A DNA stretch of 64,000 nucleotides, taken from IMG/VR virus record IMGVR_UViG_3300032046_000001, positions 1 to 64,000 of that record, one strand, 5' to 3'. This document shows, piece after piece, positions 486-46,992 of the stretch. Below the pieces are notes generated by a model. That model had not been told where the DNA came from. It made no database searches and was given only the letters and a program-made list of their open reading frames with translations. Every line of letters begins with the position of its first letter. The first letter of the stretch is position 1. Position numbers and translations under genes: made by a program.

Positions 486-1112
486 TCAATATTCCTTATA
501 AAAATGATTATAAATATGATTCCACGATTTTCCATTTTTTATATACGAAACCATTACCGTTGAAATATCATATAATTTTGATATTTCAATATTTTTAAAT
601 CCCAATTTAATCAACATGTGAATTTGATGTATTTGTTTTTCTATTAATTTTGAAGGTCTATTTTCTTTAAGTATTTCACTCAATTTATTTTTATGTTCTT
701 CTGATAATTTTTTATCTTTATGTGATTCACTCATTTTCTTTTTAGATTCTTCTGAAAAATATTTACCAATATGATGTAATTGTTGATGTTCTCCATGAGA
801 TATCAATTCGAGATTATTTAAAATATTATTTTCTTTTATTTCATCTTTATGATGAACATCACACTCTTCTGTTATTTCTCCAATAAAAGTTTCATACATT
901 AATCTATGAATTTTAAATGTTTTTGTTTTATTTTTTTTGTATAATTTGATATTAAAATAATATTTAATATCTTTATACTGTTTTAATATTTTTTCTTTTC
1001 CAAATTTTAATGATTTAACTCTACCTAAATTACTAATCATATAATCTGGATAATCTTTTATAATTTTCCAAACTTCATTTTCTAAATCTAAATTATTATA
1101 ATTATCACTCAT
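486..1112 (-). CDS. NUMOD4-HNH homing-type endonuclease with NUMOD3 and C-terminal HTH
   Basis: EVWKII..YPDYMISNLGRVKS (NUMOD4), HRL...DVHHKDEIKENNILNNLE..H (HNH), SEESKKKMSE (NUMOD3). Confidence 0.9.
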   Translation of the reverse strand: MSDNYNNLDLENEVWKIIKDYPDYMISNLGRVKSLKFGKEKILKQYKDIKYYFNIKLYKKNKTKTFKIHRLMYETFIGEITEECDVHHKDEIKENNILNNLELISHGEHQQLHHIGKYFSEESKKKMSESHKDKKLSEEHKNKLSEILKENRPSKLIEKQIHQIHMLIKLGFKNIEISKLYDISTVMVSYIKNGKSWNHIYNHFYKEY

Positions 1113-1211
1113 TTTTTAAATTCTCCAGTTTGAATTTTACCAGTAAATAAAATTATAAGAGAGCGGGATTACTGGTTATCCTTTTCGAGTGATCATCTCT
1201 ATCTCTCTTAT
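1113..1211 (-). ncRNA. Structured leader RNA element, copy A (three-way junction plus pseudoknot), upstream of an HNH gene
   Basis: Minus strand reads AUAAGAGAG AUA GAG-AUGAUCA-CUC GAAAA GGAU-AACCAGUA-AUCC CG CUCUCUUAU ... UACUGGU ... ACUGGAG ... AUG. The same architecture recurs at three other loci with compensatory changes. Confidence 0.75.
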
Positions 1212-1264
1212 TATTTTTAGGTTGTTAATCAACTATAATCTTTACAGTTTTTATCATCTTATCC

Positions 1265-34017: not shown

Positions 34018-34480
34018 TTTTTACAACATCCTCCCACGCCATTCTTGCAAGAGAATAAGCGTCGGCTAAATTGTCATCAGAGAACTCAATGCCAAATTTT
34101 TTATAAACCTGTAACAGCATCAAATTTTTCTTGGCATTACCACTACCAGTAATAAATTTTTTTAATACTTTTGGTTCGATAACTTTGAAATTTAAAGATT
34201 CTTTCTTCATCATGATTCTAATATAATAATGAAGAGCACCCAATTGAATAAGGGTATTTCCCTTCGAATTAAATGATACTCCTTCTATATTAATAATAGA
34301 ATCTTTTTGAGTATATTTTTGAATTTCTTTCCATATACTTATAAAACGAGCTTCAATTTCTTCAGTACTTTTGGTATTAAATAATTTTGATTGTATTATA
34401 TTGCCTCTTTCATCGAGAACAATAATTCCAGTTCCGGTTAGCGAAGGATCTATGCCTATAAATATTTTTTTATCCAACAT
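33998..34480 (-). CDS. ruvC: RuvC-like Holliday junction resolvase
   Basis: IGIDPSLTGTG, IEG, LKKFITGSGNAKK, DDNLADAYSLA; likely ATG at 34480. Confidence 0.9.
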   Translation of the reverse strand: MLDKKIFIGIDPSLTGTGIIVLDERGNIIQSKLFNTKSTEEIEARFISIWKEIQKYTQKDSIINIEGVSFNSKGNTLIQLGALHYYIRIMMKKESLNFKVIEPKVLKKFITGSGNAKKNLMLLQVYKKFGIEFSDDNLADAYSLARMAWEDVVKNDKIFD

Positions 34481-35219
34481 GTGACCAACTCCTTCCAATT
34501 TTTATATATGAAATTGTTCTTCGACTAACTCCGAACATATCAGCTATTTCTTGTTGAGTTAATATTCCATCTTTCAATAATAATTTTATTTGAATAACTT
34601 TTTGTTCGGTTAATTTTGAATTTGGATGTTTTTCACCTCTAAAATCAGCATGGTTTTCACTCAATTTCTTTTTGTGTTCTTCTGAAAGTGAAAATCCTTT
34701 CTTTTTTTCACTTATTTTATTTTTTGATTCTTCTGAGTGGTGTTTTCCAAGCATTGATTTTGGATGTTTTTCACCTCTAAAATCAGCATGGTTTTCACTC
34801 AATTTCTTTTTGTGTTCTTCTGATTTAGGTCGTCCTTTTCTGTCACAACTCATTTTCTTTTTCGATTCGTCAGAAAAGATATAACCACTTATTCCATCAC
34901 CACCATCAGTTATATTAACAAGAGATCCAGTTTTTAAATTAATTCTACCAATTTCATTAATTAATTGTTTTTCAAATTTAAATGAATTTTCTTCATTTAA
35001 ATTTTCATATAATTTAAAAACAATTGGTTCTAATCCAGACTGTTTAATTTTATTTATTTTATTTTTAAATAATCTACATCGACTATTGTCTAATTCTTTG
35101 TATCTATTATCTTTTCCTTTACCAATATATATTGGTTCAAAAATAAAACATACATCATTATAACAATATCTTCCAGATTTTCTTGGATCTAAATAAATAT
35201 AAATGTAAAATTTGTTCAT
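34470..35219 (-). CDS. GIY-YIG-like homing-type endonuclease with NUMOD3 repeats and HTH
   Basis: FYIYIYLDPR...PIYIGKGKDNR...E..LI..IGR...LVNITDGGDG; NUMOD3 repeats. Confidence 0.85.
   Translation of the reverse strand: MNKFYIYIYLDPRKSGRYCYNDVCFIFEPIYIGKGKDNRYKELDNSRCRLFKNKINKIKQSGLEPIVFKLYENLNEENSFKFEKQLINEIGRINLKTGSLVNITDGGDGISGYIFSDESKKKMSCDRKGRPKSEEHKKKLSENHADFRGEKHPKSMLGKHHSEESKNKISEKKKGFSLSEEHKKKLSENHADFRGEKHPNSKLTEQKVIQIKLLLKDGILTQQEIADMFGVSRRTISYIKIGRSWSHVG
34621..34823. repeat. Exact 65-bp intragenic direct repeat (duplicated NUMOD3-like module)
   Basis: 34621-34685 is identical to 34759-34823 and encodes SEEHKKKLSENHADFRGEKHP twice. Confidence 0.9.
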
Positions 35220-36161: not shown

Positions 36162-36881
36162 TTAACCCTTATCAAATGTGACATTGGGTAAACTACCAAG
36201 AGTCATCTTATCAACAAGATCTCTCTTCATTTCCTTACCTTCTTCTAATATTTCAGCTCCAAGAGGAATTTCACCAAACGGGGTTCTTAAATTTCCACCA
36301 CCATATCTTTGACGAATACGACCAATCAATATCATAATATCAGCAAGAGCAAGTTGACAAAATAATAATTGAAATTCATTTGGAATTTTTCTCAGATCTT
36401 CAGGATGGTTGCGTTCGTACTCAATAGTTATATTCCTAACATTAATTGGTGTTGGTGAGATGCGTACAATATTTGGATGGAAGAACTCGATCGTTCTATC
36501 GTAATTAGAGAATGTCTTCAACATACCCGCAATTTCGGTATCAAGTGCCCAACTTCTTAGTTCTCCTTGTGTAAATGGACCAAGAGGAGGAAATCCATTA
36601 ATTAAGTAATCACTCATATCTCCATACATGTTTTTAACATTGAGTATTTCCAATCCTTCTGGATCTTCAATATAGTACTCATTTCCACGTCCTGGTACTT
36701 GTGCGCTTTCAAGTAATGGATTCAAATATACTTTGTTTGTGTCAGGAAAATATCGTGAGAATTCACGAAGGGTATAATTTTTAAAATAATCGATAATTTT
36801 AGAATCATCTAATTCCAGAACCATGAATGAAAATCCTAAATTATCTTTTATATACTCTAAGACGCGCGTCTGAGTTAACAA
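36162..36881 (-). CDS. Neck/head-completion protein (T4 gp13-like)
   Basis: VLEYIKDNLG..LELDD..I..F..Y N-terminus and GRIRQRY.G..GEI.LG..I.EEG C-terminus; TTG start at 36881 after SD AAGGAG. Confidence 0.6.
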   Translation of the reverse strand: MLTQTRVLEYIKDNLGFSFMVLELDDSKIIDYFKNYTLREFSRYFPDTNKVYLNPLLESAQVPGRGNEYYIEDPEGLEILNVKNMYGDMSDYLINGFPPLGPFTQGELRSWALDTEIAGMLKTFSNYDRTIEFFHPNIVRISPTPINVRNITIEYERNHPEDLRKIPNEFQLLFCQLALADIMILIGRIRQRYGGGNLRTPFGEIPLGAEILEEGKEMKRDLVDKMTLGSLPNVTFDKG

Positions 36882-37567
36882 TGGATGTCTCCTTCTATTA
36901 ATGACCAACCTTTCCCAGATTTTATTCTAGAAACTGTTGATATACTAATGTTAAATATATTACTAATTTCTTTTTGAGTTATCTTTAACTGTTTTATAAT
37001 AGGAGAATTTGTAATTTTGTAAATAACTACAACTTGCCATTCTTTTAATTTAGAATTCGAATTATTTTCTCCTACATTTTTTTGACTTATTTTTAATTTT
37101 GTTTTGTTAGAAAGAAATTTTCCAATTCGTTTATTTCTCATTATTTCTTTTGATTTATTCGAATGTTTTTTTCCAAACATTGGATTCGACTCATCTTTAT
37201 TACCATTAATCATATGAAACACTCTATGTTCTTTTTTAGTCATTAAATTTAAATTTTCATAATAATTATCTTCTTTATTTTCATTAATATGATGAATACA
37301 CTCGTTTGATTTTAATTTATAATTATTAAAAATTTCAAATAGTAAAATATGAATTGACTTATTTTTAACTTTTCGATTTTTACACAAAACAATATAAAAA
37401 TATCCACTACTATCTTTATTTTGTCTTAATATTCTTCCTTCTTTGTATCTTTTAAAACTTTTAACTCTACCAAGATTACTGACTTGATAATCTGGATAAT
37501 CTTCTATAGTTTTCCAAACTTCATTTTCTAAATCACTAATGTCTAAATTTTCAAATATTTTAATCAT
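36875..37567 (-). CDS. NUMOD4-HNH homing-type endonuclease
   Basis: EVWKTIEDYPDYQVSNLGRVKS; CIHHINENKEDN..ENL; NPMFGKKHS; likely ATG at 37567. Confidence 0.9.
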   Translation of the reverse strand: MIKIFENLDISDLENEVWKTIEDYPDYQVSNLGRVKSFKRYKEGRILRQNKDSSGYFYIVLCKNRKVKNKSIHILLFEIFNNYKLKSNECIHHINENKEDNYYENLNLMTKKEHRVFHMINGNKDESNPMFGKKHSNKSKEIMRNKRIGKFLSNKTKLKISQKNVGENNSNSKLKEWQVVVIYKITNSPIIKQLKITQKEISNIFNISISTVSRIKSGKGWSLIEGDIHC

Positions 37568-37661
37568 TTTATAATCGCCTGTCAATTATTTCCTGAAATT
37601 AATTTAAAGAGAGCAGGAAGTTCAGGATTACTTCTTTTCGACGGCCAATCTATCTCTCTTT
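37568..37661 (-). ncRNA. Structured leader RNA element, copy B
   Basis: AAAGAGAG AUA GA-UUGGCCG-UC GAAAA GAAG-UAAUCCUGAA-CUUC CUG CUCUCUUU ... UUCAGGA ... ACAGG ... AUG. Confidence 0.75.
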
Positions 37662-37666
37662 TTTAT

Positions 37667-38002
37667 TTAAATGCTATTCCATAATACCATTGCTCTTTCT
37701 TTTCGTGGAACTTCTTGTTTTTCGCGTTCTATATCTAATTCGAGTTTCTTTTTTAATGGTGTTATTTCATCTATTTTTTTACCACATCTTAAACAAATTT
37801 TTTTGATATATCGTTTATCAAAATCTATAGGATCTTTTATTAATCTACAAGGTGGGGATTCTGGAGGCATAGGACGACCGTCAGTTATTTTTTTACAGTC
37901 TTCAAGATATCTTTGATGATGTTTTATATTACTTATTAATTGTACTTCTGTAATTCTTTCTAATATTTCCCAATCATGAAAACCTAATTTACACCAGTTC
38001 AT
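37667..38002 (-). CDS. Hypothetical protein with zinc-finger-like motif
   Basis: CKLGFHDW...CLRCGK. Confidence 0.65.
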   Translation of the reverse strand: MNWCKLGFHDWEILERITEVQLISNIKHHQRYLEDCKKITDGRPMPPESPPCRLIKDPIDFDKRYIKKICLRCGKKIDEITPLKKKLELDIEREKQEVPRKERAMVLWNSI

Positions 38003-38882
38003 TATCTAATATATCTCTTGTCTCACTTCGAATCGTATAATCATTATCATTTTTAGATTCATAAACTTGAAGGAGTCCATAAGTCAAATCAAATAATCTT
38101 CTAATCTTGGCATATACTTCTTTAGTATCACCTAAGTCTCTTCGAAAAACATCTTTATCTAATTTTTCATTAGTCTTGAGATCCCACAAACGACAAGTAT
38201 CAGGTGATATTTCATCAGCTAATATAAGATGTTGATCTTCAGTTCTGTGACCAAATTCGAGTTTCATATCGACCAGTAAAATTCCATGTTTTTCAAAAAA
38301 TTCTTTGATGTGAATATTGATAAGTTTAGTTAAATTTTTTATTTTGAATAAAATAATATCAACTTTACACTTATATATTGGAAGATATTCTTTTTCAGTT
38401 GGAACCTTTCTTATTAATCCCAATTTTCTAATATGGTCTTCTGTAATCATTGGATCGTCCAATTCATCACTTTTATAATAATACTCTATAATAGGTTCAA
38501 CTATTGGTGTTCCTTCTTCTATATCAAGTCTTTTTGATAAACTTCCAGCAACAACATTTCGAACAACAACTTCAATTGGAAGTATATTGACTCTATTAAC
38601 TAACATCTCCCTATCATTTAATTTAGTAATAAAATGAGTACTGATGTTATTACTGTGCAAATGAGAAAATAATATAGATGAAGAACTATTATTACAAATA
38701 CCCTTATCTTCAATTACAGCCTTCTTCTTTCCATTGAAAGCTGTTGCGTCATCATTAAATCGTTGTATTAAAATATTAGGATCATTAGTTTCAAATAATG
38801 TCTTTGCCTTACCAGAATAAAGTTCTTTTCCTCTTTTAATATGACCCCATTTAGGATCAGTATAATCAAATAAATCGTTCAT
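37989..38882 (-). CDS. purC: SAICAR synthetase
   Basis: LYSGKAK, DDATAFNG, PIEVVVRNVVAGS, YKSDELDDP, LVDMKLEFG, LADEISPDTCRLWD, DKDVFR; ATG at 38882 with SD GAGGAG. Confidence 0.95.
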   Translation of the reverse strand: MNDLFDYTDPKWGHIKRGKELYSGKAKTLFETNDPNILIQRFNDDATAFNGKKKAVIEDKGICNNSSSSILFSHLHSNNISTHFITKLNDREMLVNRVNILPIEVVVRNVVAGSLSKRLDIEEGTPIVEPIIEYYYKSDELDDPMITEDHIRKLGLIRKVPTEKEYLPIYKCKVDIILFKIKNLTKLINIHIKEFFEKHGILLVDMKLEFGHRTEDQHLILADEISPDTCRLWDLKTNEKLDKDVFRRDLGDTKEVYAKIRRLFDLTYGLLQVYESKNDNDYTIRSETRDILDNELV

Positions 38883-38889
38883 ATTCTCC

Positions 38890-40035
38890 TCAAAAATTCT
38901 CAAAATCAAAATCACTTCTATTAGAAAATAAGATATCAACATCTTCTTCTAATACTTCTACATTCCCTTTTCTTAGTGCCTTGTACATTGTATTTGACTC
39001 GGTGAAATTATCATTATTCAAAATATTAGTCACATAGTTTCTTTTAGCGATAATTTCTGTATTCGGTGGATCTTTAAAAACTTCGGATATTATTTTAAAC
39101 CACACCAATCTTAAATTATTAGATATAATTGAAGTTTTATTTTCTTCTTCAATTATTTTTGATATAGTTTTATCATTACTATTTTTTATAAATATTTTTT
39201 TCTTATTGAGAACATTATGATATAAATCTTCCATACTACCAACACACTCAATTAGACCACTGATTATTTTTGGAATGGTTTTAGGACCAATACTTTTAAT
39301 CTTAGGAACATCATCAGTTTTATCACCAAGTACAGCCATAACCAATGGAAAATATTTATCTGGTATGTCAACTTTAAATTTTAAATATGTTGACATAATT
39401 TCACCTTTTTTAACTATCTTTATTTTCTGACCTGATTTACAAAATTGATATATGTCACTTCCGAGAGAAATAGTCTGAAATAAATCATGATCATTTGAAT
39501 AAATTATATTACATGAATCTTGTAATGTAATCAATGAATTACTTATAAGATAGTATGGAATAAAATCAGCTTCGAAATTTTGTAACAAAAATAATTTACA
39601 ACTTGGAATTTTATTTATAACTTTTTCGGATAATTTCAAATTATTTTGAATAGTAGAAAAAAATACATCTTTGTCTATTTGATTAAGATTAAATAAATCA
39701 CCAATTTTACGATTACTTTTATAATTTTTATCAATATTCGTATGATAATATGAATGTCCCATTTCTGCGAAAAATATGAAATTAATATCGAGACTACGTT
39801 TTATCGCATATTTTTTATGGAATGAAAGAAAAGATATCAAAGACTCAAAAATAGAAGTATCAATAAATTTAGAATATTTTGTAGATTCTACAATATTAAC
39901 AACAAATTCTTCCAAATAGAGACAATTTAAGATGTTACGTAAATCTATAAATAAATTTAAAATTTTATAATTATTAGAATATGATAAAATGTTGTCTAAA
40001 ATCGAATATGTGGGGTAATAAGAAATGACGTTCAT
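38890..40035 (-). CDS. 5'-3' exonuclease / T4 RNase H-like (FEN family)
   Basis: FID, YKSNR, FEADFI, SNDHDLFQ, LGDKTDDVPKIKSIGPKT; ATG at 40035 coupled to the upstream mini-ORF. Confidence 0.85.
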   Translation of the reverse strand: MNVISYYPTYSILDNILSYSNNYKILNLFIDLRNILNCLYLEEFVVNIVESTKYSKFIDTSIFESLISFLSFHKKYAIKRSLDINFIFFAEMGHSYYHTNIDKNYKSNRKIGDLFNLNQIDKDVFFSTIQNNLKLSEKVINKIPSCKLFLLQNFEADFIPYYLISNSLITLQDSCNIIYSNDHDLFQTISLGSDIYQFCKSGQKIKIVKKGEIMSTYLKFKVDIPDKYFPLVMAVLGDKTDDVPKIKSIGPKTIPKIISGLIECVGSMEDLYHNVLNKKKIFIKNSNDKTISKIIEEENKTSIISNNLRLVWFKIISEVFKDPPNTEIIAKRNYVTNILNNDNFTESNTMYKALRKGNVEVLEEDVDILFSNRSDFDFENF

Positions 40036-40085
40036 AACTGTCCTGACCATCGAGGATCTAAATAAGTATAAATATAATAATTCAT
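40032..40085 (-). pseudogene. 17-codon remnant of a GIY-YIG-like endonuclease
   Basis: MNYYIYTYLDPRWSGQL* versus MNKFYIYIYLDPRKSGRY of 34470..35219; intact SD AGGAG. Confidence 0.75.
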
Positions 40086-40178
40086 AAATAATCTCCTGTT
40101 AATTATTTCCTGAAAAGAAAAAGAGAGAAGGAAGTTCAGGATTACTTCTTTTTCGAGCTTAAGTCTCTATCTCTCTTA
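40086..40178 (-). ncRNA. Structured leader RNA element, copy C
   Basis: AAGAGAG AUA GAG-ACUUAAG-CUC GAAAAA GAAG-UAAUCCUGAA-CUUC CUU CUCUCUU ... UUCAGGA ... ACAGGAG ... AUG. Confidence 0.75.
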
Positions 40179-40185
40179 TTATCCA

Positions 40186-41676
40186 TTAAGAAACCTTCCC
40201 AAATCTTGAGTAATATAATCTTGATTTAATAACATCAAATTTATCAGCAAATTTAGAACCATAACGTTTCTTGGATTCATCTTTTGTCATCATACCCCAT
40301 TGTTCTGGAACTAATTTGACAGCAACATCACCAATAACAACTTTTAATTTACGATCATGTTCTAAAATAATATCAAAACCAGTTTCCTTAGATTCTTCTT
40401 GAATCATAAGACCAATATTGGCAAAATTTAAAATTCGTTGAAATACTTCAGAAAACTTTGCACCATATTTTTCTCTAACCTGTACTGGTGTTGATTGTAA
40501 CCAGTTAACATAACTTTGTTTAACTTCTATATCATCAATTGAAACTTTTAAACCATCTGGTTCTAAAAAGAACTCAATCGATTTAAATTTAGGAATAAAA
40601 ACAGTATCAAGAACTTCACCTGTGTCTGTACCACAAAGTTGTAAACAAACAGGATCGCTCATTTCTCTATCAAATTCATAGTATTTGTTTCTAACCACTT
40701 TTACAGTAATGTTTTTATTGTTATTTCTATATAATTTTTTCAGTACATTAGTTATCTTAATGGTATCAACAGAACCATATAGTAGGTCAGCACTATTATC
40801 TTCAAAAATCAAATTCATATTACATTGTAAATGATGAAGTTGATCAGACACATTCAATATATCAGTCTTTTCTTTTATTTCAGAGTCTTTCTCTTTAACT
40901 CCAAATTTAACAGTAGGTGTTTCATTTGTTAGATCAAGCAGACATGTTAATTCATGACACTCATCAAGTTCTGTATTGCCAATTTCATCTATGACTTTTT
41001 TCAAATCATTACATGTTTCAATTTTATCTTGTTCTGGAATTAGATCTTTAGTTTCTTTTTCAACAGTCACTAAAACAAGATTAGGTTCAGTTGTTTTATC
41101 AACAGTAGCAACAATCTTTGCTCTATCACCATCACGATCAATAATTTCTTTTTCAAATCGATCTTCAGTTTCTCCAGAAATTTTTGTCACATCTTTTATC
41201 ACGTTTTCTTCTTCCTCGACAACTTTTTTAAACTTTTCCATTTCTTTTATAGTTTTTTCATTTTTCTTATCTATCAATTTACCACATGATTCAACAATCT
41301 TTTCAAGTGGAACATTGATATTGCCAGAATTTTCTTTTTCTAAAAATTTTCTATACTGATTTACAAATGTTTTATTATTTGGATCGTTATTTATTTTTAA
41401 AAACTCTTCAGGATCAGGATATTCATTTGGGTAGAAGTCTAAATCGAAAACATTTATTGGCATGATTACGTCAAATTTATAATCTGATGGTAATGTAAGT
41501 ATTTTATCATTTCGTCCAACTTTTTCTAAACTGAAAACGAGTCTTGGAATATCTTCAGATTCATCAACATGACATATAATATAATAATCTTTGTTCAAGA
41601 TATGTTCACATTTCTGACCAGCTTCAAGTAGGATCAATCTTATTTTATTAATTTCATCTCGTTCAAATGGAGTCAT
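40186..41676 (-). CDS. Hypothetical protein (496 aa)
   Basis: Long acidic ORF; two similar C-terminal units (LKV.I.D..VK...W......KYG.KF). Confidence 0.7.
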   Translation of the reverse strand: MTPFERDEINKIRLILLEAGQKCEHILNKDYYIICHVDESEDIPRLVFSLEKVGRNDKILTLPSDYKFDVIMPINVFDLDFYPNEYPDPEEFLKINNDPNNKTFVNQYRKFLEKENSGNINVPLEKIVESCGKLIDKKNEKTIKEMEKFKKVVEEEENVIKDVTKISGETEDRFEKEIIDRDGDRAKIVATVDKTTEPNLVLVTVEKETKDLIPEQDKIETCNDLKKVIDEIGNTELDECHELTCLLDLTNETPTVKFGVKEKDSEIKEKTDILNVSDQLHHLQCNMNLIFEDNSADLLYGSVDTIKITNVLKKLYRNNNKNITVKVVRNKYYEFDREMSDPVCLQLCGTDTGEVLDTVFIPKFKSIEFFLEPDGLKVSIDDIEVKQSYVNWLQSTPVQVREKYGAKFSEVFQRILNFANIGLMIQEESKETGFDIILEHDRKLKVVIGDVAVKLVPEQWGMMTKDESKKRYGSKFADKFDVIKSRLYYSRFGKVS

Positions 41677-46297: not shown

Positions 46298-46901
46298 GAT
46301 ACCAGATTTTTCCTCTTTTTATATCCGAAATCGTTATTCTACTAACTCCAAACATGTCAGCTATTTCTTGTTGGGTTAATATTCCTTCTTTTAATAATAA
46401 TTTTATTTGAATTACTTGTTCTTCTGTTAATTTGTGTTGTGGATGATTTTCACCTTTATAATTTAATTTTCCACTTTTAAACTCTTCTTTTCTCGTTTTA
46501 CTTATTTTAATTTTTGTTTCATTTAATAATATTTTTCCTTTGTTATGATATTTTGAGTGTCTTGAATGTGGTTCAGATTTCAAATTATCAATAAAATTAT
46601 TTTCTTTATCTTCGTTTGTATGATGAACATCATAATTTTTTTCTAATTTTTTGTTGAAAGTTTCATAAACTAATCGATGAATAACTTTAGTTTTAGATTT
46701 CTTATTCTTATTATGTAAATCAACATAAAAATATCCCTTATGATTTCTACACTGTTTTAATATTCTACAATCAGTACCTTTCCATTTTATAAAACTTTTA
46801 ATTCTCCCAAGATTACTAACTTGATATTCTGGATATTCTTCAATAGTTTTCCAAACTTCATTTTCTAAATCATTAATATCTAAATTTTCATATATTTTCA
46901 T
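46287..46901 (-). CDS. NUMOD4-HNH homing-type endonuclease
   Basis: EVWKTIEEYPEYQVSNLGRIKS; HRLVYETF; DVHHTNEDKENNFIDNL; ATG at 46901 after SD AAGGAG. Confidence 0.9.
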   Translation of the reverse strand: MKIYENLDINDLENEVWKTIEEYPEYQVSNLGRIKSFIKWKGTDCRILKQCRNHKGYFYVDLHNKNKKSKTKVIHRLVYETFNKKLEKNYDVHHTNEDKENNFIDNLKSEPHSRHSKYHNKGKILLNETKIKISKTRKEEFKSGKLNYKGENHPQHKLTEEQVIQIKLLLKEGILTQQEIADMFGVSRITISDIKRGKIWYHVQ

Positions 46902-46987
46902 TATAACTCCTTGTATTATTTTCCTTGAATGATTAAAGAGAGCAGGTAGCAAGGTCTACTTTTCGAGCGATCGACTCTATCTCTCTT
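46902..46987 (-). ncRNA. Structured leader RNA element, copy D
   Basis: AAGAGAG AUA GAG-UCGAUCG-CUC GAAAA GUAG-ACCUUG-CUAC CUG CUCUCUU ... CAAGG ... CAAGGAG ... AUG. Confidence 0.75.
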
Positions 46988-46992
46988 ATTAT

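What the first reader, a model, noticed from the sequence alone, without database searches (positions are those of the whole stretch)
40032..40178. Endonuclease deleted but its RNA leader and a 17-codon stub retained, now coupled to the 5'-3' exonuclease gene
Copy C is intact and drives MNYYIYTYLDPRWSGQL*, which matches the N-terminus of the GIY-YIG protein at 34470..35219. Its TGA overlaps the ATG (ATGA, 40035) of the exonuclease gene. This shows the leader accompanies both HNH and GIY-YIG families. It also suggests domestication: a core replication gene may now be translated through a leader peptide under the element's control.
Basis: partly seen in the sequence, partly recalled or inferred. 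Interest (0 to 1): 0.7.

Follow-up and report, generated by a model that had tools for sequence, protein, structure and literature searches.

The report
Leftover stub of a deleted homing endonuclease
A selfish endonuclease gene that once sat in front of a jumbo phage's flap-exonuclease gene has lost its middle, leaving its structured RNA leader and a 17-codon mini-gene that still ends on the exonuclease start codon; this is ordinary decay of a mobile gene, and the leader turns out to belong to a described but uncharacterised RNA family.

Summary
On the minus strand, a 96-nt structured leader (40181-40086) drives MNYYIYTYLDPRWSGQL* (40085-40032). Its TGA overlaps the ATG (40035) of a flap-endonuclease-like 5'-3' exonuclease gene.

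A relative (L016/L017, exonuclease 79% identical) has, at exactly this site, the same leader, a full 282-aa GIY-YIG/NUMOD3 homing endonuclease and the same ATGA overlap. Other relatives (L050-L053, L055) have no endonuclease there. The stub allele recurs in a distinct mosaic genome (L057, 18 codons) and in another sample's assembly (run X2). So the stub is a real internal deletion remnant: the first ~16 codons joined to the original stop.

New points:
- The cassette entered within the first four codons of the exonuclease gene. A relic of the old start (ATGGATAATAA, 40186-40176) survives.
- The leader has 14 genome copies. They sit before HNH genes, GIY-YIG genes and a second mini-ORF. It is a relative of Rfam int-alpA (RF02996), and one hairpin loop covaries with two downstream sites, one flanking the Shine-Dalgarno.
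- Copy C has a 1-nt insertion in the otherwise conserved CGAAAAG core.

"Domestication" is unproven. The stub supplies AGGA 5 nt before the exonuclease ATG, so independent initiation is as plausible as coupling.

The parts
40186..41676 (-). Upstream 496-aa gene of unknown function. Its TAA (40188-40186) overlaps the relic exonuclease start.
   Evidence: ORF. No Pfam or PHROG hit. Orthologues of 490-540 aa lie upstream of the exonuclease gene in L016 and L050.
40142..40186 (-). Relic of the pre-invasion exonuclease start (ATGGATAATAA, 40186-40176). It now opens a 14-codon ORF, MDNKRDRDLSSKKK*, that runs through the 5' half of the leader.
   Evidence: Endonuclease-free relatives L050-L053 read ...GGTTTCTTAATGGATAATAATCTGATAGC (exonuclease MDNNLIAYYP). 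The window reads ...GGTTTCTTAATGGATAATAAGAGAGATAGAG. L057 has the same sequence.
40086..40181 (-). Leader copy C, an int-alpA-like structured 5' UTR. P1 is 40177-40170 paired with 40128-40121. P2 is 40167-40165 paired with 40157-40155. The core GAAAAAG is 40154-40148. P3 is 40148-40144 paired with 40135-40131. The P3 loop AATCCTGA is 40143-40136. The first complementary site TCAGGA is 40113-40108. The stub's Shine-Dalgarno and flank CAGGAG is 40098-40093.
   Evidence: Model R1 gives 91.1 bits. The predicted minimum-energy fold shows P1, P2 and P3. Rfam int-alpA is matched by sister copies.
40032..40085 (-). Stub ORF of 17 codons plus TGA. It is the first ~16 codons of a GIY-YIG homing endonuclease joined to the original stop, which overlaps the exonuclease ATG.
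   Evidence: Intact orthologue at L016:5156-6004. Same stub with 18 codons in L057. Identical stub in a contig of run X2.
40041..40046 (-). TCAGGA (Ser-Gly codons of the stub). It supplies AGGA 5 nt before the exonuclease ATG and is a third site complementary to the P3 loop.
   Evidence: Sequence. Duplex energies are -9.6, -7.2 and -8.8 kcal/mol for the three sites. The intact alleles have no Shine-Dalgarno-like motif here.
38890..40035 (-). 381-aa flap-endonuclease-like 5'-3' exonuclease gene.
   Evidence: Pfam 5_3_exonuc_N and 5_3_exonuc match below their cut-offs for this protein and match in 16 of 17 aligned homologues. A profile of the alignment hits phage T5 5'-exonuclease structures (1exn, E=5e-4). 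584 homologues; conserved N-terminus.
34470..35219 (-). It has no leader of this type.
   Evidence: Pfam. PHROG 314 'homing endonuclease', 1.5e-19. Upstream sequence.
37565..37664 (-). Fourth leader copy in the window, before the HNH gene 36875-37585. It passes the Rfam int-alpA gathering score.
   Evidence: int-alpA 36.6 bits against a cut-off of 35.8.
46897..46991 (-). Leader copy before an HNH gene.
   Evidence: 77.9 bits.
1112..1213 (-). Leader copy before an HNH gene.
   Evidence: 73.7 bits.

Best explanation
The stub is the decayed remnant of a free-standing GIY-YIG homing-endonuclease cassette.

Step 1, shown by comparison. The ancestor had the 496-aa gene's TAA overlapping the exonuclease start (TAATGGATAAT...).

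Step 2, shown. A cassette of int-alpA-like leader plus GIY-YIG endonuclease entered within the first four codons of the exonuclease gene. Its 3' end supplies a new ATG for the exonuclease, and the endonuclease TGA overlaps that ATG (ATGA).

Step 3, shown. In the lineage of the window, L057 and run X2, an internal deletion of about 265 codons (~0.8 kb) removed every functional domain. What remains is the leader, the Shine-Dalgarno, the ATG, about 16 N-terminal codons and the original stop. The stub contains only the first beta-strand motif (YIY) and cannot be a nuclease.

Step 4, inferred. The 3' end of the cassette is kept because it carries the exonuclease's translation start. The leader and 5' codons may simply not have been lost yet.

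Step 5, inferred. The exonuclease is translated in one or both of two ways. Ribosomes that finish the mini-ORF may re-initiate at AUGA. Ribosomes may also load directly at AGGA-N5-AUG, a motif the deletion brought into place.

Step 6, pairings supported by covariation, function inferred. The leader is a translational control element. Its P3 loop can pair either with an upstream site or with the Shine-Dalgarno flank.
For: Intact allele at the same site. L016 and L017 have a 490-aa gene, then the leader, then a 282-aa gene (NUMOD3 3.9e-13; PHROG 314 'homing endonuclease' 9.6e-21), then the exonuclease with an ATGA overlap.

Other occupants of the same junction. L011 and L056 have endonuclease C-termini ending ...WSYIKI* and ...WSYVII* plus ATGA. 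The L011 fragment resembles the zinc-finger-bearing GIY-YIG paralogue at 244595.

Empty alleles. L050-L053 and L055 have no endonuclease there.

Relic start codon. Twenty nucleotides are shared with the empty alleles.

The stub allele recurs. L057 is a mosaic relative: 98-100% identical upstream, 95-97% in the first ~400 nt of the exonuclease gene, and 61-82% in purC. It has the same junction, one extra codon and one substitution. A contig of run X2, from another sample and study, covers 39828-40700 with one difference.

Extent of N-terminal homology. At DNA level it runs to ...TCA GGA CAG T, compared with paralogues reading TCx GGA CAG/CAA TAT TGT.

Leader. There are 14 copies. On the model-fitted alignment 99.6% of cells pair, 6 pairs show compensatory changes, and 0 of 500 shuffles reach the observed values. 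Eight P3-loop classes each have a matched upstream site and a matched Shine-Dalgarno-flank site.

Parallel case. A second leader-driven mini-ORF (G000:151426-151578, 50 aa) keeps the N- and C-termini of a 676-aa homing-endonuclease paralogue. It replaces the native AAAGGAG start region seen in relatives L078 and L079.
Against: The exact deletion junction cannot be fixed. Codon 13 (TGG) matches no paralogue at that position, and TGGTCA also occurs near the C-terminus of the L016 gene. A fusion of 12 N-terminal codons to the C-terminal codons is therefore a weaker alternative.

The closest relative with an endonuclease at the site (L011) is cut by the contig end, so the true parent gene was not seen whole.

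The GIY-YIG assignment of the parent family rests on Pfam hits below the cut-off (E about 1e-4 to 3e-5) and on the motifs. The AlphaFold model was too poor to confirm the fold (pLDDT 47.7).

Nothing here measures translation.
Confidence: 0.85

Rival explanations
1. Domestication. The leader plus mini-ORF is kept by selection as a regulated upstream ORF. Exonuclease synthesis would then depend on, and be gated by, the mobile element's RNA switch through termination and re-initiation at AUGA.
For: All leader pairings, the Shine-Dalgarno, the ATG and the frame to the original stop are preserved in two diverged genomes, despite a 3-nt indel in the stub.

Between the window and L057 the leader is 99% identical over 40180-40085 (one mismatch and an insertion next to the ATG), against 98% just upstream and 95% downstream.

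The intact-endonuclease alleles have no Shine-Dalgarno before the exonuclease ATG. Coupling is therefore plausible there and could have been inherited.

A second locus shows the same architecture, and that fusion is also in frame.

The TCAGGA before the exonuclease ATG is complementary to the P3 loop.
Against: The window and L057 are too close for any test of selection.

The 3-nt indel lies in an AAT AAT repeat, where slippage is expected.

Two in-frame remnants out of two has a chance probability of about 0.11. The remnants were found through the leader, so their retention of the leader is an ascertainment effect.

The stub lineage carries an insertion in the otherwise conserved core of the leader, which looks more like decay.

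AGGA-N5-ATG gives the exonuclease its own start signal.

TCAGGA needs only a third-position A in a Ser codon.

Relatives without the cassette manage without it.
Confidence: 0.2
2. Inert relic. The mini-ORF and leader have no effect on the exonuclease. The exonuclease is translated solely from its own AGGA-N5-AUG, or from a transcript that starts inside the remnant, and the remnant is on its way to being lost.
For: AGGA lies at good spacing. About half of this phage's ORFs have such a motif against a background of 4%, including the ORFs whose starts overlap an upstream stop.

The predicted fold leaves AGGACAGUU largely unpaired.

There is a 1-nt insertion in the leader core and an altered linker.

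A sigma-70-like TTAACA-17-TATTAT lies at 40102-40074.
Against: Promoter-like matches are no more frequent than in shuffled sequence (6 found, 5.1 expected).

The stub keeps a strong GGAG at 7-nt spacing and an ATG. It would therefore be translated unless the leader blocks it, and a ribosome terminating on AUGA would very likely affect initiation there.
Confidence: 0.35
3. Artefact or chance. The stub is an assembly error or a random short ORF that happens to resemble an endonuclease N-terminus.
For: The tblastn E-value for the stub alone is only 0.16. The 211-nt region does not fold better than shuffled sequence (z = +1.0).
Against: The same junction is found in an independent JGI contig (L057) and in another run's contig (X2). 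An intact gene lies at the same position in relatives. The stub follows a leader that precedes endonuclease genes in 12 other places in this genome.
Confidence: 0.01

Closest known systems
Degenerate homing-endonuclease genes in the invasion, fixation, decay and loss cycle (Goddard and Burt model). One example is the truncated, inactive I-TevIII of T4 compared with the full-length gene in phage RB3. Both are recalled from my own knowledge and were not checked here.
   Same: A selfish endonuclease gene that has lost its function by deletion while its insertion site stays occupied. Full, empty and decayed alleles coexist among relatives.
   Different: This is a free-standing cassette, not one inside an intron. 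It entered the first codons of a host gene and supplies that gene's start codon. The remnant keeps an elaborate RNA leader and an in-frame mini-ORF.
RNA structures that sequester the ribosome-binding site of T4-family homing-endonuclease mRNAs: I-TevI, I-TevII, I-TevIII, segB, and mobE of Aeh1 (review PMC2988022).
   Same: A structure in the 5' UTR of an endonuclease gene that can pair with its Shine-Dalgarno region, presumably limiting translation.
   Different: Those are individual simple hairpins with a late promoter inside. Here a ~95-nt three-helix element with a loop-to-tail pairing is shared by 14 genes of three endonuclease families. Its loop covaries with two alternative downstream sites. 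No internal promoter was shown.
int-alpA RNA motif, Rfam RF02996. It was recalled as one of the candidate structured RNAs of Weinberg et al. 2017 (PMC5737381), but that paper's main text does not mention it and its supplements are not held. Function unknown; Rfam types it as an sRNA.
   Same: The same order of elements and conserved nucleotides: P1, UAG, P2 hairpin, CGAAAAG, P3 with loop AACCUU, CCUG, P1', and a tail ending AAGG. Two copies in this genome pass the gathering score (36.6 against 35.8 bits) and a third scores 33.4.
   Different: The helices are AT-rich. The context is homing-endonuclease genes of a jumbo phage, not integrase or alpA genes. Most copies, including copy C, were not reported by the Rfam model. 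The element continues into a second complementary site at the Shine-Dalgarno, which the Rfam model does not cover.
Overlapping stop/start junctions between T4 homing-endonuclease genes and their neighbours, for example nrdA/mobE UAAUGA (PMC2988022).
   Same: An endonuclease ORF and a host ORF share stop and start nucleotides, which suggests translational coupling.
   Different: In T4 the endonuclease is the downstream partner. Here the host gene is downstream of the endonuclease, or of its stub.

Membership tests
GIY-YIG homing endonuclease (the stub's parent gene and the stub itself) | N-terminal ~100-aa catalytic domain with the GIY...YIG motifs, recognised by a family model | tested here: inconclusive
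   The intact orthologue and paralogues show YIY...YVGKG. Pfam LEM-3_GIY-YIG gives E=3.3e-5 and 1.5e-4, below the cut-off. PHROG 314 'homing endonuclease' gives 1e-19 to 1e-20. The PDB profile search gave only a weak GIY-YIG hit (E=0.41). The AlphaFold model was unusable.
GIY-YIG homing endonuclease (the stub's parent gene and the stub itself) | DNA-binding region (NUMOD3 repeats and a C-terminal helix-turn-helix), as in Seg and I-TevI-like enzymes | tested here: met
   True of the intact alleles only. NUMOD3 gives 3.9e-13 (L016) and 1.8e-12 (window 34470-35219), with HTH hits.
GIY-YIG homing endonuclease (the stub's parent gene and the stub itself) | The stub itself encodes a catalytic domain | tested here: not met
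   It has 17 residues. Only the first YIY strand is present, with no YVG motif and no downstream catalytic residues. The stub is a remnant, not a member.
int-alpA RNA (Rfam RF02996) | Score at or above the Rfam gathering threshold (35.8 bits) | tested here: not met
   Copy C gives no int-alpA match at E<=10, and none of the window's copies passed in the default scan. Sister copies at 37592-37660 and G000:172555-172622 score 36.6 bits, and G000:181410-181481 scores 33.4. The family of leaders is related to int-alpA, but copy C on its own does not qualify.
int-alpA RNA (Rfam RF02996) | Architecture and conserved nucleotides: P1, UAG, P2, CGAAAAG, P3 loop AACCUU-like, CCUG, P1', and a 3' AAGG that pairs with the loop | tested here: met
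   Seen in the alignment to the Rfam consensus and in all 21 aligned copies. Copy C has one extra A in the core (GAAAAAG).
int-alpA RNA (Rfam RF02996) | Genomic context near integrase or alpA genes, as the family name implies | tested here: not met
   All 14 copies lie directly upstream of homing-endonuclease genes or their remnants.
Endonuclease leader that sequesters the ribosome-binding site (T4 type) | The Shine-Dalgarno region can pair within the leader | tested here: met
   The P3 loop pairs with the Shine-Dalgarno flank over 4-6 bp in all 20 copies, and the pairing covaries across 8 loop classes. The mean duplex length is 4.95 for a copy's own site against 3.75 for other copies' sites. 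This is predicted pairing, not a measurement.
Endonuclease leader that sequesters the ribosome-binding site (T4 type) | An internal late promoter yields a shorter, translatable transcript | not tested
   Only a sigma-70 consensus scan was run, and its hits were at chance level. A GGGAACAAAAT motif sits directly before two leaders, but none was seen inside a leader.
Translationally coupled gene pair | Overlapping stop and start codons | tested here: met
   ATGA at 40035-40032. The same overlap is present in L016, L011, L056 and L057.
Translationally coupled gene pair | The downstream gene lacks its own ribosome-binding site | tested here: not met
   The stub allele has AGGA 5 nt before the ATG. 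The intact alleles do lack one: TATATAAAAATATG.
Translationally coupled gene pair | Downstream translation depends on upstream translation | not testable with these tools
   This needs reporter assays or ribosome profiling. The one run search listed only DNA runs and was not a search for RNA.
Flap endonuclease / 5'-3' exonuclease (the downstream gene) | N-terminal resolvase-like domain and C-terminal SAM-fold domain | tested here: inconclusive
   Both Pfam domains hit this protein below their cut-offs (28.6 and 20.2 bits) and hit 16 of 17 aligned homologues (best 1.7e-9 and 3.3e-9). A profile of the alignment hits T5 5'-exonuclease structures at E about 5e-4.

The most novel reading that the evidence does not exclude
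A mobile-element riboregulator may have been co-opted. After homing-endonuclease cassettes overwrote the translation start regions of host genes, internal deletions left 'leader plus mini-ORF' modules. These modules would now act as regulated translational couplers. Expression of the phage flap exonuclease here, and of a 552-aa glycosyltransferase-like gene at G000:151579, would then be gated by an int-alpA-type RNA switch. This would also give the orphan int-alpA family its first functional context.
Probability: 0.15. Interest if true: 0.65.

Novelty: new member of a known kind. Interest (0 to 1): 0.42.

Why it matters
The stub itself is an expected stage in the life of a selfish endonuclease gene. 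The locus is still useful because all stages are visible among close relatives:
- empty site;
- full GIY-YIG gene;
- a second, partly seen endonuclease occupant, which resembles a zinc-finger-bearing GIY-YIG paralogue;
- deleted stub.

It shows that these cassettes enter at, and replace, the translation start of a host gene. That explains why their ends outlive their middles.

The more valuable by-product concerns the leader. It is a covariation-supported RNA element that recurs 14 times before three endonuclease families and is related to the uncharacterised Rfam motif int-alpA. One of its loops can pair with either of two sites, one next to the Shine-Dalgarno. That yields a concrete, testable hypothesis for what int-alpA-type RNAs do: translational control of DNA-cutting genes of mobile elements.

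Tried and rejected
- **Isolate phage collection:** megablast with the locus and tblastn with the exonuclease found no match, so there is no cultured relative.
- **Single-protein scan of viral contigs:** found nothing. The alignment-based scan found only distant relatives, at most 47% identical.
- **Metagenome scan for the exact stub junction:** returned only the window's own contig, Ga0315289_10000013.
- **Rfam at gathering thresholds on the window:** nothing. The int-alpA link appeared only in permissive scans of other copies.
- **Fold of the 211-nt region:** no more stable than shuffled sequence (z = +1.0). Support for the structure comes from covariation, not energy.
- **Promoter and terminator scan:** promoter-like hits at chance level and no terminator.
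- **PDB sequence and profile searches with the endonuclease:** only spurious or very weak hits.
- **AlphaFold model of the L016 endonuclease from a 6-sequence alignment:** pLDDT 47.7, so it was not used for fold search.
- **Junction model '12 N-terminal codons + C-terminal TGG TCA...':** considered less likely than N-terminal homology through codon 16, because TCA GGA CAG T matches the paralogue N-termini while the following bases do not match the known C-termini.
- **Two-step model (deletion between TATGAA microhomologies, then a 5-nt deletion):** fits the letters but needs two events. It is kept only as a possibility.
- **Start at ATG 40050 (386-aa ORF):** rejected. Homologues and gene callers start at 40035, and no Shine-Dalgarno precedes 40050.
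- **Supplement of PMC5737381:** not held, so the original description of int-alpA could not be read.
Full report
**Setting.** The window is bases 1-64000 of a 312,420-bp virus record with direct terminal repeats and 28.6% G+C. The record is IMG contig Ga0315289_10000013, and the runs that hold the sequence are labelled sediment metagenomes. Its size makes it a jumbo phage. No cultured phage is similar. Genes around the finding lie on the minus strand.

**The observation.** One search confirms the sequence as described.
- The 496-aa gene ends with TAA at 40188-40186.
- A leader of about 96 nt follows (40181-40086).
- GGAG lies 7 nt before ATG(40085).
- The ORF reads MNYYIYTYLDPRWSGQL and stops at TGA(40034-40032).
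- The ATG at 40035 shares three of its bases with that stop region (ATGA). It opens a 381-aa protein whose N-terminus, MNVISYYPTYS, is conserved in homologues.
- The ORF listing reports a longer 386-aa frame from ATG 40050. No Shine-Dalgarno precedes that ATG, and gene callers do not use it.
- The protein is a divergent flap-endonuclease-like 5'-3' exonuclease. Both Pfam domains hit below their cut-offs here and hit in 16 of 17 homologues. A profile of the alignment hits phage T5 exonuclease structures.

**Is the stub an endonuclease remnant?** Similarity alone is marginal.
- It shares 12 of 17 residues with the gene at 34470-35219 (my count).
- DNA identity is 73% over 51 nt.
- tblastn against the whole genome gives E=0.16.

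Comparison with relatives settles the matter.
- In L016 and L017 (two NCBI metagenome assemblies, exonuclease 79% identical) the order is: 490-aa gene, leader, 282-aa gene, exonuclease.
- The 282-aa gene begins MIDNYYIYICLDPRKSGRY... and ends ...GKSWSYIKI*. Its TGA overlaps the exonuclease ATG in the same ATGA arrangement.
- It carries NUMOD3 and a helix-turn-helix, hits PHROG 314 'homing endonuclease', and gives a below-cut-off GIY-YIG hit.
- L011 (exonuclease 93.7% identical at DNA level) and L056 also have an endonuclease C-terminus (...WSYIKI*...WSYVII*) abutting the exonuclease with ATGA. Both are cut by the contig end.
- The L011 fragment resembles the zinc-finger-bearing GIY-YIG paralogue at 244595, whose N-terminus reads PRTSGQY. 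That is the closest match to the stub's PRWSGQL.
- L050-L053 and L055 have no endonuclease at the site.

**The stub allele is not an assembly accident.**
- L057 is a JGI contig from another sample. It carries the same junction with MNNYYIYIYLDPRWSGQL*, which has one more AAT codon and Ile instead of Thr.
- L057 is a mosaic relative, not a duplicate. Identity to the window is 98-100% upstream, 95-97% in the first ~400 nt of the exonuclease gene, 61-82% in purC, and 100% beyond that.
- A 1,968-nt contig of run X2 (another sample and study) covers 39828-40700 with a single difference.

**Anatomy of the deletion.**
- Codon by codon, the stub follows the paralogue N-termini through ...GAT CCx AGA xxx TCx GGA CAG T. 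It then reaches TATGA, the stop/start junction.
- The deletion therefore removed about 265 codons. The reading frame still ends on the original stop.
- Codon 13 (TGG) is unexplained. TGGTCA also occurs near the C-terminus of the L016 gene, so a junction after codon 12 cannot be excluded.
- A two-event path through TATGAA microhomology also fits the letters.
- In every version, the remnant encodes only the first YIY strand and cannot be an enzyme.

**How the cassette sits in the host gene.**
- The empty alleles read ...GGTTTCTTAATGGATAATAATCTGATAGCTTACTATCC. That is the upstream stop overlapping an exonuclease that starts MDNNLIAYYP.
- The window and L057 read ...GGTTTCTTAATGGATAATAA and then run straight into the leader (GAGAGATAGAG...).
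- The first 11 nt of an older exonuclease start therefore survive at 40186-40176. They now open a 14-codon ORF that runs through P1, P2 and half of P3 of the leader.
- The cassette entered within the first four codons. The exact point is blurred by ATAATAA, which is also the usual 5' flank of the leader.
- The cassette brought a replacement start, ATG AAx GTx ATx...
- In more distant relatives the exonuclease start also abuts or overlaps the upstream stop. Tight junctions are therefore ancestral here.
- They are also common in this genome: 50 of 349 ORFs of at least 100 aa start with an ATGA or TAATG overlap.

**The leader.**
- BLAST and a covariance model built from 18 copies find 14 copies in the genome. 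Four of them are in the window: 1213, 37664, 40181 and 46991.
- Ten copies precede HNH/NUMOD4 genes, two precede GIY-YIG genes (74735+ and 244595-), one precedes the stub, and one precedes a 50-aa ORF.
- Overall, 10 of 23 HNH-type and 2 of 11 GIY-YIG-type genes have the leader.
- The structure is P1 (AAGAGAGA/TCTCTCTT), UAG, a 3-4-bp P2 with a variable loop, the core CGAAAAG, a 4-5-bp P3, CCUK, and the P1 return strand.
- On the model-fitted alignment of 21 copies, 99.6% of cells pair and six pairs show compensatory changes. None of 500 shuffles reaches the observed values. Versions with the 3' partners slid by 1-3 columns drop to 47-69% pairing. The alignment leans towards the model.
- The most telling feature is the P3 loop. 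It comes in eight sequence classes (for example CCTGA, CCGAA, CTCAA, CCCTA, CCTTG, CCAGTA, CTTTCA, CTCCA).
- In each copy, a matching complement lies about 10 nt after P1. A second matching complement lies immediately 5' of, and running into, the GGAG.
- The loop can therefore pair with one site or the other. Only the second pairing would occlude the Shine-Dalgarno.
- I infer a translational switch. The pairing is supported by covariation, but the function is not shown.

**The leader is related to a described family.**
- Permissive Rfam scans match two copies to int-alpA (RF02996) at 36.6 bits, just above the 35.8-bit gathering score. A third copy scores 33.4.
- The alignment to the Rfam consensus shows the same order of helices and the same conserved UAG, CGAAAAG, loop AACCUU, CCUG and tail AAGG.
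- The function of int-alpA is unknown. I recalled it as one of the candidate RNAs of Weinberg et al. 2017 (PMC5737381). That paper's main text does not mention it, and its supplements were not available.
- Copy C itself gives no Rfam hit, although it scores mid-range with my own model.
- Copy C and L057 share an extra A in the core (GAAAAAG). Eighteen of the other 19 aligned copies read GAAAAG and one (L058c) reads GATAAG. The orthologous L016 leader and a 151-nt contig of run X4 have the four-A form.
- This may be the first sign of decay, but that is inference.

**What drives exonuclease translation?**
- In the intact-endonuclease alleles the bases before the exonuclease ATG are TATATAAAAAT, with no Shine-Dalgarno-like motif. 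Coupling to endonuclease translation is plausible there.
- In the stub allele, the Ser-Gly codons TCA GGA place AGGA 5 nt before the ATG.
- About half of this phage's ORFs have such a motif, against 4% at random positions. The share is the same for ORFs whose starts overlap an upstream stop.
- The predicted fold leaves AGGACAGUU mostly unpaired.
- The exonuclease may therefore be started by terminating ribosomes, by free ribosomes, or by both. The sequence cannot say which.
- TCAGGA is also a third complement of the copy C loop (-8.8 kcal/mol, against -9.6 and -7.2 for the two canonical sites). It needs only an A at one third-codon position, so I treat it as possibly chance.

**A second example.**
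- The leader at G000:151325-151427 drives a 50-aa ORF whose stop abuts the ATG of a 552-aa glycosyltransferase-like gene.
- Residues 2-39 of the 50-aa ORF match the N-terminus of a 676-aa paralogue at 190400-192430, and residues 26-46 match its C-terminus at 71% identity.
- That paralogue has C2H2 zinc fingers and a Vsr-like nuclease domain, and hits PHROG 3339 'homing endonuclease' at 6.6e-92.
- Relatives L078 and L079 have, at that site, a plain 60-nt spacer with AAAGGAG before the gene.
- Here again a cassette overwrote a host gene's start region, lost its middle, and left both ends. The retained 3' end supplies GAGG 8 nt before the host ATG.
- This supports a general rule: the 3' end is kept because the host gene needs it.
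- It does not prove that the leader is needed, because I found these remnants through the leader.
- Both fusions are in frame, which has a chance probability of about 0.11.

**Verdict.**
- Deletion of the endonuclease, and the leader's association with several endonuclease families, are supported.
- Control of the exonuclease by the element is possible but unshown. To whatever extent it exists, it dates from the invasion, not from the deletion.
- The finding is a well-documented member of a known kind, a decaying homing-endonuclease gene.
- The side result is of more interest: a covarying leader related to int-alpA.

Noticed in passing
window 37565-37664 (-), plus 1112-1213 (-) and 46897-46991 (-); G000 69403, 74635, 125115, 135964, 151325, 153863, 172551, 181406 (+); G000 205443, 244692 (-): The leader has 14 copies in the genome, four of them in the window. 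The copy at 37565-37664 is beyond the three that the finding's lettering (copy C) implies. Two copies pass the Rfam int-alpA (RF02996) gathering score. The P3 loop covaries with two downstream sites, one of them flanking the Shine-Dalgarno.
   Followed up: yes
window 40142-40186 (-): A relic of an older exonuclease start (ATGGATAATAA), still overlapping the upstream TAA. It opens a 14-codon ORF, MDNKRDRDLSSKKK*, that reads through P1, P2 and half of P3 of the leader. Ribosomes coupled from the 496-aa gene could unfold the leader. That effect is speculative.
   Followed up: partly
G000:151325-151578 (+), outside the window (locus L076:526-779): A second leader-driven mini-ORF of 50 aa. It is made of the N- and C-termini of a 676-aa zinc-finger/Vsr-like homing endonuclease whose paralogue lies at G000:190400-192430. 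It abuts a 552-aa glycosyltransferase-like gene. Relatives L078 and L079 have a plain AAAGGAG spacer at that site.
   Followed up: yes
window 40041-40046 (-): TCAGGA inside the stub is a third site complementary to the P3 loop of copy C. It also provides AGGA 5 nt before the exonuclease ATG. Its genome-wide frequency is 2.8e-4 per position, so it may be chance.
   Followed up: partly
whole genome G000: The genome is extremely rich in homing endonucleases. There are 23 HNH/NUMOD4-type and 11 GIY-YIG-type N-terminal domains. There are also partial copies with no intact ORF found from their start, for example at 157076 and 232403.
   Followed up: partly
window 35264, 25147, 49771 (-) and 61261 (+); 10 more sites in G000: The motif GGGAACAAAAT occurs 14 times. 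Most copies lie a few tens of nt upstream of a likely gene start on the same strand, and two lie directly before leader copies (74627, 181396). It is probably a phage promoter or another transcription signal. No copy lies before leader copy C.
   Followed up: partly
window 37989-38942 (-): The phage carries a SAICAR synthetase (purC) gene (Pfam 5.7e-76). Between the window and L057 this gene is only 61-82% identical, while both flanks are 96-100% identical. This indicates allele replacement by recombination.
   Followed up: no
window 39990-40035 (-) compared with L011:343-388: L011 is 93.7% identical to the window across the exonuclease gene, but only from codon ~16 onward. The first ~45 nt differ by many synonymous changes. 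This would fit co-conversion or target-site divergence next to a different endonuclease occupant.
   Followed up: partly
window 40074-40102 (-): A sigma-70-like TTAACA-17-TATTAT spans the stub's Shine-Dalgarno and first codons. It could give a transcript that starts inside the stub, but such matches are at chance frequency in this AT-rich sequence.
   Followed up: no
locus L055:1767-1836: In an endonuclease-free relative, the 540-aa upstream gene is itself reduced to its last codons (...KFGKVS*) just before the exonuclease ATG. This is another case where only the piece abutting the exonuclease start survives.
   Followed up: no
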